From assembly GCF_016432865.1 (NCBI RefSeq), contig NC_067401.1:205716001-205780000 (forward strand): a stretch of DNA of 64,000 nucleotides, read 5' to 3'. The DNA is from Antechinus flavipes. Taxonomy: Eukaryota. Shown here piece after piece: positions 1-16,234 of the stretch; positions within the stretch are counted from its first letter, which is position 1, and each line of letters starts with the position of its first letter. A model generated the notes under the pieces. The model was not told where the DNA came from, did no database searches, and was given only the letters and a program-made list of their open reading frames with translations. The position numbers were made by a program, and so were the translations under genes.

Positions 1-1740
1 AGCTTTGGTTATTCTATCAGGAATACTTGAAATTCTGTAATTTCATTAAAGGTTCATTCCCCCTCATACGATTATACTCAGCTTTGTTAGGTAGGTTATT
101 ATTAATTGTAATTCTAGAGCCTTTGCCTTCCAAAATATTATATTCCAAGCTCTTCATTTCTTTATAGTAGTTGCTGCTAAATATTATGTGATCCTAACTG
201 GTGGCTCCCTAGGATATGAATTCCTTCTTTCTGACTGCTTGCAGTATTTTTCCTTTGACCCAGGAGCTCTGGGTTTTGGTTACAATATTCTTGAGTTTTC
301 CTTTTGGTGTTTCTTTCAGATTACCAGTGGATTCTTTTAATTTACAATTCTTTAATTGCCCTTTGGATCTAACATGTCTGAACAGTTTTCTTTTTATTTA
401 TTTCTTTATATTTATATTTTAATATATTATATAAATATAAAGTTATATTTATTAATATATTAATAACACATTAATTTAATATTGATATTAAATATTATTT
501 ATTTATAATAAATATTATATATTTAATATAGTGTCTAGGATCTTTTTTGTTCATTTGGATAGTTCAATGATTCTTAAATTATTTCTTCTCATACTACTTT
601 TCAGATAAGTTGTTTTTTCTTCTGTGAGAAATTTCATAATTTTTTCCTATTTTTTTTCAGGCTTCTAATTATGTTTTATTATTTCTTGATGTGTCATGGG
701 GTCATTATCTTTCATTTGGCCAATTCTAATTTTTGAGGAGTTATTTTCTTTGATAAGGTTTTATACCTTCTCTCCCTCTTTCCCCCAGCTTTTAATTTTC
801 TTTTCATATCTTTTTTCCCCTCATTTTCCAATTTTTCTTCTTCTGCTCTCAATTTTTAAAATAATTTTTTTATATCTTTCTAAAACTCATTTTAATTCTT
901 CTAGGAATTCTTATTGTATTTGTGTCCAAGATACATTTTTTTTCAAGTCTTTGTAGATGTTTTCAAGATATTATCTTCTTCAGTATTTATTTTTATCATA
1001 GCAGTCTTTTATGGATAATTTTTTTTTAATCGCTAATGCTTTCCAACCTGCTTTTTTACTTAGTGCTGGCACTGGAGGTGGCTGGGATGTCTGGTCTGAG
1101 TTTTTTTCTTCTTATGTCCTATTGCTTTCACAATTCAGTCTGGGAGCCTGTAAGCTTTCAGTGCTCCCAAAGTGGATATGATTTAGGGAGAGGTCTGTTC
1201 TCGGCTGTCCTTGTCTGAGCTCTGCAATTTCTTTATCAGTTCCAGGTCTGTTAGCTTGTCCTTGTTTGGAAGTATCTACAGAATGCTGCTGTATTCATTC
1301 ACTTAGCCTGCTTAGAGGTCTGAGGGTTTAGAGCAAGTGAAGTGCTGGTTTCCTTTTGGTCTGGAATTTTTTCCCTGGTTACTTCACTGAGGGTTTAGTT
1401 CCTGAGTTAAAGGCTAGAATTGAGTCCCTGCTGTGCTTCTGTGCTCAGAGCCATACAACTACATTCTCTTAAACAGTCCCTTGTTCAGTAAAGGGTTCAT
1501 CTAGAGTTAACAGCAATTGCTCCTCTCCATCCTGGATCAGTGAACTGGAACCGGATAGGGGGTTCTTGCCTCAAGGGCTAGTTTGAAGTTCCTGGAGATC
1601 TCTCTGGCTCTGATTCTTCCTTTCCCGGTGTCCTCTTTCAGTCCCATGTTTCATGTTCCTGGTCAGATCCTGTTCCAGGATCTACAGACCCATCTTCCTA
1701 TCATTCTAAGCTGTCATGGACTGGAAAAATAATTCATTGG
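1..1740 (-). mobile_element. Degenerate LINE-1 5' portion (ORF1 and probable 5' UTR), truncated by the window edge
   Basis: The reverse complement of ~1-400 reads, with frameshifts and stops, as an L1 ORF1p C-terminus (KILQA.RKKEF...GA.RIT..LAA.T.K..RAWN.IF.KAK...YL.KLSI). 530-960 is T-rich, as expected antisense to the A-rich coiled-coil region. The right boundary is approximate. Confidence 0.75.
400..530. repeat. AT-only low-complexity tract interrupting the L1
   Basis: Almost pure A/T (ttatatttatattttaatatattat...). Confidence 0.85.
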
Positions 1741-1795
1741 GACTCTTTCTTGGCTTTCTTGATCAGAATTCAAGAATTCTGTGCATTTTGTAGAT

Positions 1796-1976
1796 CAAAG
1801 CTTCTCAAACTGTGAGTTGCAACCCCATTGTATAACTGAATGTGAGGGGGGTCATAAAATTATAACTTATTATCAGTAAATTATTTGTATACCTATTTTA
1901 AACACTTATATATCTGGAGTTGTATAAAAATATATTAGGTGAAAAGGGATCATGAGTGGAAAAAGTTTAAGACCTG
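1796..1976. mobile_element. Short non-autonomous DNA transposon (hAT/MITE-like)
   Basis: Imperfect terminal inverted repeats (caaagcttctcaaact ... agtttaagacctg) flanked on both sides by tagat; family not assigned. Confidence 0.45.
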
Positions 1977-2104
1977 TTTAGATCACTGTGGAAAAAGAGT
2001 AGTAAAGAACTAGCCTCCACTGCTTCTTCTGCAAACTTGATTGCTATTCCTATTCTTTCAACATTTCCCTTTATGACAAACTTTTCAGAGCTCTCTCCAT
2101 TGAG

Positions 2105-2352
2105 AGACAGAATAATATAAAGTGTTGAGCACAAAAATTGGTGTCAGGAAGACCTGAATTTCAAATCCTGACTGAGACACTAATTTGTATAACCTTGGGC
2201 AAGTTACTTAATCTCTTTGAACCTCAGTCTCCTCATCTGTAAAATGGGTATAATAAGAGATTGGTTTTTGGAGGTTTTTTTAGGAGGATCAAATGAGATA
2301 ATGTATACTGAGCAGTTTACTACATTCAGGATTCTTCATAAATGTCAGCTAC
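2105..2352 (+). mobile_element. MIR-family CORE-SINE
   Basis: CORE motif ttgggcaagttacttaatctct...cctcagtctcctcatctgtaaaatggg and MIR-like tail ggatcaaatgagataatgta. Confidence 0.8.
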
Positions 2353-2633
2353 TCCTGTCATTGTTCTTTAAGTATGTTCTAGTTTGTGAATGTCTCTTCA
2401 GGATATATCCTGACCTATCACTGAACTCCAAACTCCAGATGTGGTTAGATAAAAGCGCAGCACAGTACATTAAGACAATCATGCCTCCCTATTCTGGACA
2501 CTATCCTTCTTTAAATACAGCTGAAGACCACATACACTTTTTGGGATTCTGTGTCACATGACTCCCTCAGAATAAGGATACAGTTCACCAAAACCCTCAA
2601 ATTTTAAATGATTTATTAAAAAGTTTTAAATTA

Positions 2634-2766
2634 GAGGCAGCTAGGTGATACAGTGGATAAAGTACCAACCCGGAGTCAGGAGGTTCTAAGTTCAAATATG
2701 GCTTCAGATATTGACACTAGTTCTGTGACCTGGGCAAATCATTTAACCCCAATTGCCACAAATAAA
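2634..2766 (+). mobile_element. Short marsupial SINE (WSINE1-like) with 15-bp target-site duplication
   Basis: ggcagctaggtg...cagtggata...gagtcaggagg...gttcaaat...aaccccaattgcc plus A tail. Flanks are aaaagttttaaatta (2619-2633) and aaaagatttaaatta (2767-2781). Confidence 0.8.
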
Positions 2767-3253
2767 AAAAGATTTAAATTAAATTAAATTTAAAATTTAA
2801 ACCTTAAATTTAAATTAAATTTACATTCCCCAAGACTTCTCTAGAACAACTTTCTCATTTTACAGAGGAGGAAAATTACTTGCCCAAAATATTTTTCGTC
2901 TTGATTATTCTCTGTGTTGCTGGTATTCTACATTTGTCCTGTTATTTTGCTGAAGCTACCTTCAGAACTTCAGACTTACTATCCCTATTAAATATCACCT
3001 TATTCAGAATAAAAAGAAAAGGGTCAAGAACACAGCCTTAAATAACTTCCCATCAACCAATCTTCTGAGAGGGTCTGGTTGGTTAATAAATTCTGAACTC
3101 ATCATATTATCATCTAGTCCACATCTCATCATCTAAACCCACCATGATATTGTGGGAATCAAGTACCTTGCTGAATGATTTGTCTATAGCTTCTCCTATC
3201 ATGTCTCCTTTTGCCCTACCTCTGTAACAAGTCCTCGCCTAAGCCCAACATAC

Positions 3254-3450
3254 CTCCCCATCCGAGTTCTCCTGGAGAAGCCGGAGAAACTCTTGTTGCT
3301 CAGGTCCATCCAGCTTCTTGATGAAGAAAAGAAGTTCCCACCATTCGGCCTGGCTCAGACACCCAGACTCTGTGTTGCTCTGAGCCTCAGCTTTAAGGTA
3401 CGGCAGAGCATACAGTCCCACAACGGGTTTCCACTCTGAGAACGGACGTG
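3254..3450 (-). CDS. CUL7: CUL7-position gene, coding exon 5 (ARPFSEW...[21 protein letters not shown]...DGE)
   Basis: Acceptor ccaacag, donor GAG|GTATGT; 197 nt. Confidence 0.93.
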
Positions 3451-5969
3451 CTGTTGGCACAAGCATAAAAAGTATTGACCAGCTGTTCAGGAGAATGTGA
3501 TACTGGTCACAGTCAGACCAGCTCAGGGGCCGCCTTTTTCTTTGGTTACTGTTCCTCTAATTCAGGTAAGCCTCTCCCCCATACATTACTCCCCTGGGAA
3601 TGCTTGTCTCTCCAAACTCACCTATACTTGGGGCCAGGCACCTGCTGCCCCCAGTTCCTTTCTCTGGCTCAGTAGTAACTTTGTCCTCAGTTACAGGACC
3701 CAGAATCTCCACCATGTGCCAGTGCACCCAGTATGTGCGGCCTGTCGACTGCCACAGCACCTGGAGTAAAGAGTGGAGGAAGTTTAGTCGCTTGGGCCAG
3801 GGGGGCATCCTCAGTTAGAGACCCAGACCTGGGGCATGTCAGGCCCCTTCCCATCAGCCACTAAAACATCCGGGGCTTGGGCAGCTCTCCCCAGAGTGGA
3901 GGCTAGGGGAAGAGCATACAAAGGACCCAAACTCTGTCAAATGAGAAGAGAAGGGAGGTAGCAGTATACTCGGTTGTTTCTGTCTCCTTTCCACTACCAG
4001 GAACCTCTCTGTCTGGCCTCTCAGTGGTTCAATCTTTTCCAAACGGCCATTCTCCCTGGGGCTAAGGTAGGGAGACAGTCCCTCTCCAGCCTTCCCCTAC
4101 TTTCTCTAGGGTCTCTTTCTTTTCCAGGGATGCTAGTCTACCTCCCCCGCCCCACCCTCGAGGTCACCAGTTCCAGCCCACGGACACAGACCTGCACAGG
4201 GGGCATTCCATTGTTGCTCTGCCGAAACTCGCCTTGGTCCCCAGCACTGATCTCCTCATAATCCTCCAGCATTCGAACGCGCATCCCTGGCTGCAGGGTC
4301 TCCTGGACGTAGTCCGCGTAGCCACTCAGGCTCGAGAACTCAGACCGAGGCCTGAAGGCCCGGCTCGGCCTCCTGGGGGAAGCAGGGGGAAGCAGGGTGG
4401 GGAGGATGGTGCTCGGCACAGAGGACCTGGGCTGAAAGATAGACCGGGCGGGCCGAGGGGGAGACGCAGGCTGCCTCCCTGGGCCCCGGTCCCATCCCAT
4501 GCCCCGAACCAATTCTGAAATCAGGTTGCCCATGGCCATGCTAAACTCCAGTTCCCTCTGGCCACGGCTCTTCTCCACACTGGAGGACTTGTTAGGGGAG
4601 CACCGGTTTCCCCACTCCCCAGACCCTGGCTCCACACTGCTACTTAGCTGGTCCAGGAGGGACGTGACACACAAGTAACGCTTCACTAAGGAGAAGAGCA
4701 GCTTTCCGGGGATCTGCAGGACAAACACCCTGGGCTCAGGGCACTGGCCTCCCGGCTCTGCCTCTTCCAAGCACGCTGCCAGAGAAGGGAGGACAAAAGC
4801 CCAGCCTGCGCCCGCACTCCCTCCCGTTACCTGGGGCAGGTGGATCCCTTCAAAGGCCATGCAGTGCTCTTCGGAGGATGTGGTCTCTGCAAACAGCTCC
4901 AACAGAGTGGAGCGGCTGTCAAAGTCCATGTGCTGTTCGATGCCATCCTGCTGGCTCAGTGACAGGAGCACATGGGCCCTGCTCCCTAAAACACAAGCCC
5001 TGCTCTGCATCCTGTCCCAAAAACCCATCTACCGCCTGCCTTCTGCCCGGTTCTCTCTCATCACCTGCTTCTCACTCTCTCCCACCCTCCGGCAGAACCA
5101 GGCCCTCTCCCACCAAAGGGCTCCCAGGACCGGCGGGCTCTGAGGGCTGAGACCCAGCCTCACACAATAACCTGTGCACTCACACCTGGCCGTTCAATTC
5201 TAAACTCTGTCTCTTTCTAGTCACCCCCCTCCTCCTTCAGTGGGGGTGCGTTCGCTCGGGGAACCGAAGGGTCCTGACCCCCTCCTTTGCCAAGGGCCCG
5301 ATCCCAGGTCCTGCCGGGGTCCTGCCTCTTTCCCGCTTCCCCTTTCCTTCCCTGCTGGCCCTCACCAGCGTCGTGGGCCGCCAAGGCCTGCAGCATCTTC
5401 CCGGCACTCCTGCGAATCTGGGACTCGGGGTTGCCCAGCATGTGCATGAGCAGGTCCAAGGCCCCCGTCTCCCGGAAGACGCCAGCCAGGGGTCCGATGC
5501 TGGCGTAGGCGCTGAGCACGTGGATGGTGTGTAGCACCGAGGCTGCGGGACTCGAGCTCCCCCCCCCATCCAGCTGCCGGGCGGCTCGACGCACCAGTCC
5601 TCGGACGTCTGCGGCCATCTCTCCCAGAGAGGCTTCGTCCAGCCCCCCGGCATCCCGGGGAAAGGCGCCCACGCTGCCCACGGGTTCGTGCTGGGGCCCC
5701 TTGGCTGGGGCTCGCTCGCCAAGGAGCATGGGGCAGTTGGCGTAGACCTCGGGGGCAGAGAGCCACATGAGGATGTGCTCTGCCTTGCCCTCTATGGAGC
5801 TGCCGCTGCCCACTCCGCCCTCCTTCCCACGCTGAAGGACAGTCCAACGGATCAAGTACTCTGGATGCCCATCGTGGCCCTGGCGCTGCCGCAGCAGTTC
5901 CTCGGGGTACGCCTGCAGTCGTGGGCCCAGGGGCACCAGCAGGTCTCTGCTTCTGCGTTCTCCCACCAT
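3254..5969 (-). CDS. CUL7: Cullin-7/9 family protein, 5' partial (539 codons; N-terminal region and CPH domain), in the CUL7 syntenic position
   Basis: Coding exons 5969-5366, 4985-4831, 4713-4192, 3760-3622, 3450-3254 (604+155+522+139+197=1617 nt, frame intact, all GT-AG). CPH domain ...[25 protein letters not shown]...[16 protein letters not shown]. It lies just downstream of MRPL2 on the same strand, as human CUL7 does, but the N-terminal sequence resembles CUL9 (see findings), so the symbol rests on synteny. Confidence 0.8.
3622..3760 (-). CDS. CUL7: CUL7-position gene, coding exon 4 ([21 protein letters not shown]...)
   Basis: Acceptor actccag, donor G|GTGAGT; 139 nt. Confidence 0.93.
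4192..4713 (-). CDS. CUL7: CUL7-position gene, coding exon 3 ([13 protein letters not shown]...NNGMPPVQ), start of CPH domain
   Basis: Acceptor cctgcag, donor CAG|GTCTGT; 174 codons. Confidence 0.93.
4831..4985 (-). CDS. CUL7: CUL7-position gene, coding exon 2 ([15 protein letters not shown]...IHLPQ)
   Basis: Acceptor tttag, donor CAG|GTAACG; phases 1 to 0 fit. Confidence 0.93.
5366..5969 (-). CDS. CUL7: CUL7-position gene, coding exon 1 ([24 protein letters not shown]...ALAAHDA)
   Basis: Acceptor tgttgtag before 5978, ATG at 5969, donor G|GTGAG at 5365. Confidence 0.93.
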
Positions 5970-6329
5970 CCTGGGCACCTACAACAGAGGAAGAAAAGGA
6001 GCGGGGTGAGGAAAAGTGCTCGCTGTGAAGTGACTCTGTGGGGAGGTGGAGACTGTGGGGCAGAACTGACTTATCTCATCAGAACAAAGGGAAGAGGAGC
6101 CCAGAACCAGGGATCCAGGGCAGGGAAAAACAAGGCTGTGGGGCTGCGGTAGGTTTGGGAAGGAGGATGTTACCGGAATGTTTCAGTTGCCAGATGGATG
6201 AAGCTACAATTGAGAGACTATGAAAGGTAAATTGAGGAATCTAATTTGGGAAGATAATATGCCATTTGTTCAAGGATTAAGAAACATGATAATAGCTCTA
6301 CCCGGAAAATAAAACCCTGGGGAAGAGTG

Positions 6330-6960
6330 GGAAATGATAATAGGGAGGGGGGGAGTGGGAGTGGGCTGGCTCACGGAAGGGACCACCGAGAGGAGGAGGA
6401 TTCATGCAAATATAATAGCTGGGGCACGGGCAGGGAAGCAGGGAAGCAGGGAAGCAGGGAAAGCAGGGTGTGGCGGATGCAGAAGCCGACAGGAGGGAGT
6501 AGGGTCGCAGGGGTTGACACGAGTCCCAACCAGAGCTGCAGTGGAGCCTAGGGCAAAAGGGGTGGGGTGGGAGGCGGGAAGGAGGAGAGCGAGAGGATGG
6601 AACGTTCCTCGGATGGGACCCACTGCGCCTGCGTAGTGTCACTCCGGAGCCGAGATACTCCCGGACCAGGAGGAGATGTGTACTGCAGTCGTGGGCTCAG
6701 GGGCCCCGGACTGGGGTTGGGCGTGAGGGTCAGATCCCGAGATTTGGGATAGCTCTGACACGGGGAGGAGTGGAGTCGGAATGATCCCGGACTGGAAGAA
6801 CACTTCTTCCAGACCACGTTTAACTGCTCTCAGAACAAGGAGAGCCCAGCTGCGGTACAGCCGCACAGGGCGAGAAATGGCCCTTCCCAGCTCCCGTTAA
6901 TTCCCTGGCAGTGGCTCATTTCCTTTTGGCTAGAGAGCACTATGGAAAGCCGACGGGCTT
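6330..6960 (-). promoter_or_regulatory. CpG-island promoter of the CUL7-position gene
   Basis: CpG-rich; NRF1-like TGCGCCTGCGTA at 6624-6635; short (GCAGGGAA)n tandem repeat at ~6429-6468. Confidence 0.7.
6375..6610 (-). other. CUL7: Probable non-coding first exon of the CUL7-position gene
   Basis: Lies in the CpG island; candidate donor CC|GTGAGC at 6374. The transcription start is inferred, not seen. Confidence 0.4.
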
Positions 6961-7341
6961 AGGGTGGGGGCGAAAGGAGCAGATGGGGCGAACCCATGTT
7001 CCGCCTACCCTCTTTTCCAGTCCCTGAGGTTCCCCAGCACGTCCCTCTCTCATCCCTATCCCAACACCCCGCAATAGACCTCTCCTCCCCTCCTCCCCCC
7101 TCCGTGCTCTTGGTCCGTTCCTCGTCCTGCCAACACCGCAGGTGCATTCCCCTTCCAGTCCCGACACTCCTGCACGTCCTATCCCCAATCTTTCTGGTAT
7201 GTTTCTGGTATCCTCAATGCCACTGGCACGTTTCCCCTCCTCTAACAGCTATAACAACACCTTTTGGCCCCAACACCACTGGACTATTCCTCTTGTCCCT
7301 CAACTACAAGAAGAAGACAGAAACCAGTCCAAAGGGGTTCA

Positions 7342-7347
7342 TTTATT
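7342..7347 (-). terminator. MRPL2 polyadenylation signal AATAAA
   Basis: tttatt on the plus strand, 29 nt past the MRPL2 stop codon. Confidence 0.8.
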
Positions 7348-7375
7348 GGGAGGCAGGGGAGTAGAAATATCAGGG

Positions 7376-16234
<8,859 letters not shown>

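What the first reader, a model, noticed from the sequence alone, without database searches (positions are those of the whole stretch)
3254..5969. Gene in the CUL7 position has a CUL9-type N-terminus: possible CUL7/CUL9 gene conversion or chimera
Seen: the gene sits immediately 3' of MRPL2 on the same strand, with KLC4 and PTK7 beyond it. Known: that is the position of human CUL7, whereas CUL9 lies past PTK7 and SRF in the opposite orientation. From recalled human sequences, coding exons 1-3 carry CUL9-type blocks nearly verbatim ([19 protein letters not shown]; [15 protein letters not shown]; [43 protein letters not shown]; [41 protein letters not shown]) rather than the CUL7 versions (KAEHILLWMSKDEIYANCH; [15 protein letters not shown]). 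The end of coding exon 5 ([22 protein letters not shown]) instead looks CUL7-like ([22 protein letters not shown], versus CUL9 KKLDLCEQQPIFQNLWKNLDET). Inference: either the inverted CUL7/CUL9 pair exchanges 5' exons by gene conversion in marsupials, homogenising the N-terminal and p53-binding CPH region, or marsupial CUL7 keeps the ancestral state and eutherian CUL7 diverged quickly.
Basis: partly seen in the sequence, partly recalled or inferred. Interest (0 to 1): 0.75.

Follow-up and report, generated by a model that had tools for sequence, protein, structure and literature searches.

The report
CUL7–CUL9 gene conversion in marsupials
The first exons of this marsupial's CUL7 gene look like CUL9 because, in every marsupial checked, the two neighbouring inverted genes keep copying a 2.5-3 kb 5' stretch (introns included) onto each other, so both ubiquitin ligases carry the same p53-binding N-terminal module, which is not so in placental mammals.

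Summary
Five GT-AG exons on the minus strand (5969..3254) encode exactly residues 1-539 of the annotated cullin-7 of Antechinus flavipes (1685 aa, no RBR). Exons 1-4 score higher against human CUL9 than human CUL7, and exon 5 the reverse.

In seven marsupials from five orders, CUL7 and CUL9 of the same species differ at 0-7 of the first 464 residues. Orthologues between species differ at 9-31. In the N-terminal tree the paralogues pair by species, and the orthology topology is rejected (AU p 5e-29).

At DNA level the tract is 99.4-99.6% identical between the two genes in Sminthopsis (another dasyurid) and Monodelphis. It runs from about 150-170 bp upstream of the ATG to mid exon 4, introns included. 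Its edges are sharp and the flanks are diverged or unalignable. Antechinus and Sminthopsis CUL7 differ by about 9% over the same stretch. A second homogenised block covers residues ~1000-1400.

Most of the "CUL9-likeness" relative to humans is ancestral state that eutherian CUL7 lost.

No paper and no earlier scan note reports this.

The parts
5366..5969 (-). CUL7 coding exon 1 (ATG at 5969; residues 1-201 plus the first base of codon 202). Encodes the CUL7_CUL9_N beta-barrel and the first helical repeats.
   Evidence: boundaries, GT donor; PF23168; exact substring of P0443; human CUL9 322.6 bits versus CUL7 226.3.
4831..4985 (-). CUL7 coding exon 2 (residues 202-253).
   Evidence: 50/51 identical to human CUL9; 94 versus 51.7 bits. 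Turtle, viper and lamprey carry nearly the same sequence.
4192..4713 (-). CUL7 coding exon 3 (residues 254-427), with the first two thirds of the p53-binding CPH domain.
   Evidence: 238.4 versus 181 bits; matches the CPH structures 2JUF and 2JNG; PF11515.
3622..3760 (-). CUL7 coding exon 4 (residues 428-473): the end of the CPH domain, then a variable linker. The 3' edge of the homogenised tract falls inside this exon.
   Evidence: the Sminthopsis CUL7/CUL9 differences resume at window-equivalent 3656.
3254..3450 (-). CUL7 coding exon 5 (residues 474-539). The first half is gene-specific (CUL7 orthology signal). The last ~39 codons (about 3254-3370) are a second short patch shared with marsupial CUL9.
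   Evidence: human CUL7 69.8 versus CUL9 59.9 bits; S7=A7!=S9 at 11 sites versus 2; identical patch in marsupial CUL7 and CUL9.
3657..6142 (-). Inferred CUL7/CUL9 homogenised (gene-conversion) tract, about 2.49 kb. It covers ~170 bp of the intron upstream of the ATG, E1, I1, E2, I2, E3, I3 and the first ~100 bp of E4. Coordinates are projected from the Sminthopsis CUL7/CUL9 comparison.
   Evidence: 14 differing positions between Sminthopsis CUL7 and CUL9 inside the tract, dense differences outside; the equivalent Monodelphis tract is 2.9 kb with 13 differing positions. The tract was not measured in Antechinus itself.

Best explanation
The gene is the true CUL7-position, RBR-less cullin of Antechinus flavipes. 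Its 5' ~2.5 kb has been repeatedly overwritten by non-allelic (interlocus) gene conversion with the inverted paralogue CUL9. That stretch runs from about 170 bp upstream of the ATG, through exons 1-3 and their introns, into exon 4. It encodes the N-terminal beta-barrel, the helical repeats and the p53-binding CPH domain. CUL9 lies about 145 kb away, beyond MRPL2, KLC4, PTK7 and SRF.

Conversion recurs in every marsupial lineage examined, so the two genes evolve in concert there: both proteins share an essentially identical 464-residue N-terminal module. The linker and ARM region (residues ~465-800) and the C-terminus keep gene-specific sequence. A second block (residues ~1000-1400, with its introns and a 37-bp minisatellite) is also homogenised.

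The shared sequence looks 'CUL9-type' against human proteins mainly because eutherian CUL7 has diverged fast from the ancestral state. A few shared derived states also point to CUL9 ancestry of the tract.

Shown: tract identity including introns, sharp boundaries, pairing by species, and absence of an RBR.
Inferred: that Antechinus' own CUL9 carries the same tract, the direction of transfer, and any selective reason.
For: - Identity of the gene: the exons are exact substrings of P0443 cullin-7 of A. flavipes. There are no IBR/RBR domains, whereas Sminthopsis CUL9 has IBR and UBA_ARI1. MRPL2 lies upstream and a TMEM121-like gene downstream.
- Protein level: CUL7 versus CUL9 of the same species is 100% identical in 50-residue bins up to ~450 in 7 marsupials. 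It drops to 42-70% at 450-800 and is ~100% again at ~1000-1400. Within-species mismatches are 0-7 of 464; between-species mismatches for the same gene are 9-31.
- Trees: the N-terminal tree pairs the paralogues by species in 7 of 7 species. The AU test rejects a marsupial CUL9 clade, with an lnL difference of 170.8 and p 4.6e-29. In residues 470-800 the same sequences group by gene, with a CUL7 clade at 100*.
- DNA, Sminthopsis CUL7 versus CUL9: E1 99.8%, I1 99.5%, E2 100%, I2 99.1%, E3 99.8%, I3 98.9%. Antechinus CUL7 versus Sminthopsis CUL7 is 78.6-98.1% over the same segments.
- Site patterns over E1..I3: S7=S9!=A7 at 192 sites, S7=A7!=S9 at 3. The pattern reverses in the 5' flank, E4, I4 and E5.
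- Boundaries are sharp, going from 98-100% to 40-65%. The Monodelphis tracts are 2.9 kb with 13 differing positions, 3.6 kb at 99.4%, and 298 bp at 100%.
- GC3 is 70-92% in the tract versus 50-56% just after it, as GC-biased conversion would give.
Against: - The CUL9 locus of Antechinus flavipes itself was not obtained. For this species the tract is inferred from the sister genus and six other marsupials.
- No region of the marsupial gene groups with eutherian CUL7 in trees. Its orthology to CUL7 therefore rests on synteny and architecture, not on sequence.
- The trees used the quick search with SH-aLRT only, and several long branches are present.
- GC3 varies along the gene for other reasons too.
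Confidence: 0.88

Rival explanations
1. There is no conversion. Marsupial CUL7 merely keeps the slowly evolving ancestral N-terminus under strong purifying selection, and eutherian CUL7 diverged rapidly.
For: At 41 of 62 polarised sites where the eutherian paralogues differ, marsupials agree with eutherian CUL9 and squamates, so eutherian CUL7 is the derived one. Eutherian CUL7 sits on a very long branch, 0.72. Exon 2 is almost invariant from lamprey to human CUL9.
Against: Purifying selection cannot make introns 1-3 98.9-99.5% identical between paralogues when orthologous introns of two dasyurids are only 79-91% identical. It cannot make the paralogues pair by species (AU p 4.6e-29). It cannot give sharp tract edges.
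Confidence: 0.05
2. The gene is really CUL9, or a CUL9 copy, relocated next to MRPL2 by inversion between the inverted paralogues.
For: NCBI and Ensembl name this gene 'cullin-9-like' or 'Cullin 9' in wombat, monito del monte, agile opossum, opossum and Tasmanian devil. Near-identical inverted repeats 2.5-3 kb long could in principle mediate inversion.
Against: The product is 1685 aa with no IBR/RBR or Ariadne part. The downstream neighbours are the TMEM121-like gene and the RRP36 side, as for CUL7. A separate 2500-aa CUL9 with an RBR exists 143-148 kb away in Sminthopsis and Monodelphis. The 5' flank of Sminthopsis CUL7 is orthologous to that of Antechinus CUL7, at 70 sites versus 4.
Confidence: 0.02
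3. Marsupial CUL7 and CUL9 come from a recent or lineage-specific duplication, so their similarity is young age rather than conversion.
For: In several regions marsupial CUL7 and CUL9 form one clade apart from the eutherian genes (99*). No region groups marsupial CUL7 with eutherian CUL7.
Against: Identity is mosaic: 100% beside 42-70% within one gene pair. In residues 470-800 all marsupial CUL7 form one clade (100*) and all CUL9 another, so the duplication predates the marsupial radiation. Yet the N-termini pair by species. The same gene order, orientation and RBR-less architecture occur in eutherians, and an RBR-less cullin-7 occurs in echidna.
Confidence: 0.03
4. It is an assembly or annotation artefact: a collapsed or duplicated 5' region, or gene models borrowing exons.
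For: Near-identical 2.5-3 kb repeats are the kind of sequence that assemblers mishandle.
Against: The pattern appears in seven independently assembled species. The two copies sit in distinct loci with unalignable flanks and differ at 13-14 positions, including indels. The Monodelphis CUL9 protein maps codon by codon, 2504 of 2506, onto its own locus.
Confidence: 0.02

Closest known systems
Human/eutherian CUL7 and CUL9 (PARC) paralogue pair on 6p21.1
   Same: The domain plan is the same: N-terminal beta-barrel, helical repeats, CPH, ARM, DOC and cullin, with the RBR only in CUL9. The inverted, divergent arrangement around MRPL2, KLC4, PTK7 and SRF is also the same. PMC11257990 describes CUL9 as paralogous to CUL7 over its first 1978 residues.
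   Different: In eutherians the N-terminal 450 residues of the two proteins are only 59-62% identical, and eutherian CUL7 is highly derived. In marsupials they are 98.5-100% identical within a species, introns included.
Classical concerted evolution by interlocus gene conversion (for example primate gamma-globin HBG1/HBG2, alpha-globins, RHD/RHCE, Y-chromosome palindrome arms; from general knowledge, not tested here)
   Same: Paralogues are more alike within than between species. Identity extends through introns. Tract edges are sharp, the genes are mosaic, and GC is raised in the converted parts.
   Different: Here the partners are two large, functionally distinct E3 ligase genes about 145 kb apart in inverted orientation. 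Only two internal blocks are homogenised, and the state has persisted across all marsupial orders sampled while eutherians lost it.
Sauropsid, amphibian and lamprey CUL9-like genes (Vipera 2517 aa, Lampetra 2582 aa)
   Same: Exons 2-3 and the CPH region of the window are close to these outgroups. This shows that the 'CUL9-type' blocks are largely the ancestral state.
   Different: These outgroup proteins are long, CUL9-sized forms. Whether those species also have a separate CUL7 was not resolved. Podarcis 1714-aa entries cluster with Vipera CUL9-like.

Membership tests
CUL7 (RBR-less member of the CUL7/CUL9 cullin group) | N-terminal CUL7_CUL9_N beta-barrel and CPH (p53-binding) domain | tested here: met
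   PF23168 in E1 and PF11515 in E3/E4. The same domains are found in full-length P0443. The region matches the CPH structures 2JNG and 2JUF.
CUL7 (RBR-less member of the CUL7/CUL9 cullin group) | ARM_CUL7_CUL9, DOC/APC10 and cullin domains, and a protein that ends after the cullin domain without an RBR/Ariadne module | tested here: met
   P0443 (1685 aa, contains the window's exons exactly) has PF24742, PF03256 and PF00888 and no IBR. The control Sminthopsis CUL9 has IBR, IBR_1, IBR_2 and UBA_ARI1. These parts lie outside the window.
CUL7 (RBR-less member of the CUL7/CUL9 cullin group) | Conserved position: downstream of MRPL2 on the same strand, with the RRP36 side beyond the 3' end | tested here: met
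   MRPL2 exons lie at window 8377-8773 on the minus strand. The annotated loci L004, L005 and L007 show Ribosomal_L2 upstream and a TMEM121-family gene downstream.
CUL7 (RBR-less member of the CUL7/CUL9 cullin group) | Sequence orthology to eutherian CUL7 (grouping with it in trees) | tested here: inconclusive
   No region groups marsupial CUL7 with eutherian CUL7. Echidna cullin-7 groups with marsupial CUL7 only in the C-terminal region, with support 87. Past conversion and the long eutherian CUL7 branch blur the signal.
CUL9 (PARC) | C-terminal ARIH-type RING1-IBR-Rcat and Ariadne module | tested here: not met
   There is no IBR or UBA_ARI1 hit in P0443. The gene ends 20.5 kb before the window start and is followed by the TMEM121-like gene.
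Interlocus gene conversion / concerted evolution | Paralogues are more similar within a species than orthologues are between species | tested here: met
   0-7 versus 9-31 mismatches in 464 residues in 7 marsupials. The tree pairs paralogues by species. AU p 4.6e-29. Antechinus' own CUL9 was not available.
Interlocus gene conversion / concerted evolution | Identity extends to introns and synonymous sites | tested here: met
   Sminthopsis: I1 99.5%, I2 99.1%, I3 98.9%, exons 99.8-100% at DNA level. Monodelphis: 13 differing positions in 2.9 kb.
Interlocus gene conversion / concerted evolution | Discrete tracts with sharp edges next to diverged sequence (mosaic) | tested here: met
   Sliding identity jumps from 40-65% to 98-100% and back. 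Further tracts are shown.
Interlocus gene conversion / concerted evolution | GC enrichment of converted parts (GC-biased conversion) | tested here: inconclusive
   GC3 is 70-92% in the tract and 76-90% in the second block, against 50-56% at codons 450-650. Window GC is 0.63 at 4001-6000 against ~0.40 around. This is consistent but not specific.

The most novel reading that the evidence does not exclude
Concerted evolution of the N-terminal (p53-binding and assembly) module of CUL7 and CUL9 is the ancestral mammalian condition. In marsupials selection keeps it, because the two ligases must present identical N-termini, for shared partners or for mixed CUL7-CUL9 assemblies. On this reading, escape from conversion in the eutherian stem let CUL7 diverge rapidly and take on its eutherian-specific roles (placental growth, the 3M pathway). 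The identical inverted tracts may also drive recurrent inversion of the MRPL2-KLC4-PTK7-SRF block.
Probability: 0.2. Interest if true: 0.8.

Novelty: new member of a known kind. Interest (0 to 1): 0.63.

Why it matters
CUL7 (3M syndrome, placental growth) and CUL9 (p53-linked tumour suppressor) are treated as two distinct ligases with 60-63% identical bodies.

In marsupials their first 464 residues are kept identical by ongoing conversion, and residues ~1000-1400 are also homogenised. This has lasted since before the didelphid-australidelphian split. It has four consequences:

1. It explains why annotation pipelines call the marsupial CUL7 gene 'cullin-9-like' or 'Cullin 9'. Orthology and selection analyses that include marsupial CUL7/CUL9 will be distorted.
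2. It is a natural experiment. Whatever the N-terminal module binds must be shared by both ligases in marsupials but can differ in eutherians.
3. It places the rapid divergence of eutherian CUL7 in the eutherian stem, which makes a link to placentation testable.
4. It adds a clean, well-bounded case of long-lived conversion between inverted paralogues about 145 kb apart.

Tried and rejected
1. A word search with exon 1 alone found only exon-sized fragments: one marsupial orthologue fragment (P0001; loci L001 and L002), eutherian CUL9 and sauropsid fragments. It found no marsupial CUL9, because of the length filter.
2. The big representative search was then needed to get full-length ids. Its 50% clusters hid the marsupial proteins.
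3. A word search seeded with dugong CUL7 just reached the first marsupial entries. A third search seeded with Petaurus CUL7 exposed marsupial CUL9.
The direct same-genome test in Antechinus was therefore not done.
5. Sminthopsis CUL7 isoform X3 is not on record for DNA. The longest isoform worked.
6. A first tblastn exon map was too patchy for GC3 and was replaced by exact 5-mer chaining. A first full-length MAFFT run timed out.
7. The Ensembl wombat 'Cullin 9' P0318, which I had labelled CUL7, behaved as CUL9 in region 470-800. It was dropped from later trees.
8. The window's exons were never joined into a spliced model. Each was searched by reference, and the database protein P0443, which contains them exactly, was used for full-length work.
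9. P0018 looked like human CUL7, so it was left out of all analyses and its contig was not fetched. The human CUL9 entry P0355 was not used either. Human CUL7 and CUL9 entered only through the PDB search outputs.
10. PTK7 could not be verified, because only a putative first exon lies in the window.
Full report
**What is in the window**

- E1 5969..5366
- E2 4985..4831
- E3 4713..4192
- E4 3760..3622
- E5 3450..3254

Pfam finds the CUL7/CUL9 N-terminal beta-barrel in E1 and the CPH domain across E3/E4. Every exon translation is an exact substring of cullin-7 isoform X1 of Antechinus flavipes (P0443, 1685 aa). The reverse complement of window 1-8969 is identical to the corresponding stretch of that species' genome record (L005). 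So the window is from the yellow-footed antechinus, a dasyurid marsupial. The gene has 25 coding exons, and only the first five lie in the window.

MRPL2 lies just upstream on the same strand. A kinesin-light-chain gene follows on the other strand. Only a putative first exon of PTK7 lies in the window, and it was not verified. Downstream of the gene lies a TMEM121-family gene, as earlier notes of this scan said.

**Check of the observation**

Each exon was searched separately against the PDB. Bits for human CUL9 versus human CUL7:
- E1: 322.6 / 226.3
- E2: 94 / 51.7 (50 of 51 residues identical to CUL9)
- E3: 238.4 / 181
- E4: 49.8 / 39.1
- E5: 59.9 / 69.8

The gene is not CUL9. P0443 has ARM_CUL7_CUL9, DOC and cullin domains but no IBR/RBR, whereas Sminthopsis CUL9 (P0311, 2508 aa) has IBR, IBR_1, IBR_2 and UBA_ARI1.

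**Finding the marsupial paralogue**

- Exon-sized queries cannot reach full-length proteins, so the first word search gave only fragments.
- The representative search supplied full-length seeds.
- A search seeded with dugong CUL7 just reached marsupial entries.
- A search seeded with Petaurus CUL7, residues 1-530, listed the marsupial CUL7-position proteins. These are ~1685 aa with no RBR, and are often named 'cullin-9-like' or 'Cullin 9' by NCBI or Ensembl.
- The same search also listed the CUL9 cluster (P0311, with RBR). Its N-terminal 530 residues are 95% identical to Petaurus CUL7. Eutherian CUL9 reaches 70-76%, echidna cullin-7 70% and eutherian CUL7 about 59%.
- The cluster listing gave CUL7 and CUL9 for seven species: Sminthopsis, Monodelphis, Trichosurus, Notamacropus, Phascolarctos, Macrotis and Dromiciops.

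**Protein-level evidence**

Within each of the seven species, CUL7 and CUL9 compare as follows in 50-residue bins:
- residues 1 to ~450: 100% identical
- residues 450-800: 42-70%
- residues ~1000-1400: close to 100% again
- the remainder: 74-90%

Over residues 1-464 the within-species paralogues differ at 0-7 positions. The same gene differs at 9-31 positions between species.

A maximum-likelihood tree of residues 1-450 pairs the paralogues by species in all seven species. Forcing the marsupial CUL9 sequences into one clade costs 170.8 log-likelihood units (AU p 4.6e-29). In residues 470-800 the same sequences sort by gene: marsupial CUL7 clade 100*, CUL9 clade 85. So the duplication is older than the marsupial radiation, and the N-terminal pairing is not due to young age.

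In residues 1000-1400 and in the C-terminal part, marsupial CUL7 and CUL9 form one clade (99*). In 1000-1400 eutherian CUL7 and CUL9 also form one clade (96*). This points to older homogenisation in both lineages.

**DNA-level evidence**

Loci were fetched for Sminthopsis CUL9 and CUL7 (L003, L004) and for Monodelphis CUL9 and CUL7 (L006, L007). In both species the genes lie on one chromosome in divergent orientation, with their 5' ends 143-148 kb apart.

In Sminthopsis, identity between the two genes by segment is:
- E1 99.8%
- intron 1 99.5%
- E2 100%
- intron 2 99.1%
- E3 99.8%
- intron 3 98.9%

Antechinus CUL7 versus Sminthopsis CUL7 is 93.4, 78.6, 98.1, 90.4, 94.6 and 90.7% for the same segments.

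Over E1 to intron 3, site patterns are 192 for (Sminthopsis CUL7 = Sminthopsis CUL9, different from Antechinus CUL7) against 3 for the orthology pattern. The 5' flank, E4, intron 4 and E5 show the orthology pattern instead, at 70, 12, 51 and 11 sites.

The edges are sharp. Projected onto the window, the tract runs from about 6142 to about 3657. It has 14 differing positions inside and dense differences outside. Of these 14 positions, Antechinus agrees with one copy at 5 and with the other at 6, as expected for new mutations after homogenisation.

Monodelphis has an equivalent 2.9-kb tract with 13 differing positions. It starts about 148 bp upstream of the gene start. There is also a 350-bp identical patch covering the end of E5, a 3.6-kb block at 99.4% and a 298-bp block at 100%. 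Elsewhere the paralogues align only in exons, at 70-84%.

**Why it looks CUL9-like, and the direction of transfer**

I polarised residues 1-464 with two squamates, over the 62 sites where the eutherian paralogues differ and a marsupial state can be assigned:
- 41 sites: marsupials = eutherian CUL9 = outgroup, so eutherian CUL7 is derived.
- 5 sites: a state shared with eutherian CUL9 while the outgroup agrees with eutherian CUL7. A further 11 have an uninformative outgroup.
- 0 sites: a derived state shared with eutherian CUL7. A further 2 are uninformative.
- 3 sites: eutherian CUL9 is the derived one.

The likeness is therefore mostly ancestral, with a weak signal that the tract is of CUL9 ancestry.

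The CUL7-like end of E5 ([21 protein letters not shown]) is also present in marsupial CUL9. It shares 'GP' with echidna and eutherian CUL7. Transfer may therefore have gone the other way there. This is an inference from few sites.

GC3 is 70-92% in the tract and 76-90% in the second block, against 50-56% just after the tract. Window GC is 0.63 at 4001-6000. This is consistent with GC-biased conversion but not specific to it.

**Mechanism proposed**

I propose recurrent intrachromosomal non-allelic gene conversion between inverted paralogues. It would be limited to two blocks where homology is high enough. Each event restores the identity that allows the next, so the process sustains itself. 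This is an inference from the pattern. No recombination intermediate or polymorphism was examined.

The functional consequence is that marsupial CUL7 and CUL9 carry the same N-terminal beta-barrel, helical repeats and CPH domain. In the human proteins the CPH domain binds p53 (PDB 2JNG and 2JUF matched; PMC11257990).

**Literature**

Full-text searches gave the following:
- CUL9 with 'concerted evolution': 0 papers.
- CUL9 with 'gene conversion': 1 paper, unrelated.
- CUL7 with 'gene conversion': 6 papers, none about this.
- CUL7 with 'marsupial': 7 papers, none about this.

PMC2785787 places CUL7/PARC as a chordate-restricted group. PMC11257990 gives 63% identity for the human pair. Earlier notes of this scan on the same genome mention CUL7 but not CUL9 or conversion.

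**Limits**

- The trees are quick searches with SH-aLRT support only, and long branches are present.
Exons were searched one by one, and the database protein P0443 was used for full-length comparisons.
- A fragment that looked like human CUL7 (P0018) and the human CUL9 entry (P0355) were left out of all analyses.

Noticed in passing
L005:23342-23922 (Antechinus CUL7 intron, about 14.3 kb before the window start) and L003:20873-21797 (Sminthopsis CUL9): A 37-bp minisatellite has 15.7 copies in Antechinus CUL7 and 25 copies in Sminthopsis CUL9, with the same consensus. It lies inside the second homogenised CUL7/CUL9 block, so it is shared by both paralogues. It is the array that another note of this scan described as decoy splice sites.
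   Followed up: partly
Proteins (eutherian CUL7 and CUL9, residues ~800-1400): Eutherian CUL7 and CUL9 are 86-90% identical at residues 801-999, against 48-68% elsewhere. They form one clade (96*) at residues 1000-1400, apart from the marsupial genes. This hints at old conversion in the eutherian stem as well.
   Followed up: partly
and listings: Annotation of the marsupial CUL7-position gene is inconsistent. It is 'cullin-7' in Antechinus, Sarcophilus, Sminthopsis, Petaurus and Trichosurus, 'cullin-9-like' in Vombatus, Dromiciops and Gracilinanus, and 'Cullin 9' in Ensembl/UniProt entries of Monodelphis, Sarcophilus and Vombatus. Conversion explains this.
   Followed up: yes
P0281 and P0294, UniProt 'Cullin-9' of Sus scrofa, 2397 and 2114 aa: These two pig transcript-derived entries have an N-terminus 81-86% identical to dugong CUL7, yet carry IBR/RBR domains. 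They may be chimeric CUL7-CUL9 transcript assemblies or artefacts.
   Followed up: no
window:4138-5028 (minus strand): E2, intron 2 and E3 lie in one open frame of 296 codons. Retention of intron 2 (117 bp) would therefore keep the reading frame.
   Followed up: no
window:46206-46330: A (CA)n/(TG)n microsatellite lies next to a poly-A/T run in the large first intron of the putative PTK7 gene. It is ordinary.
   Followed up: no
   Followed up: no
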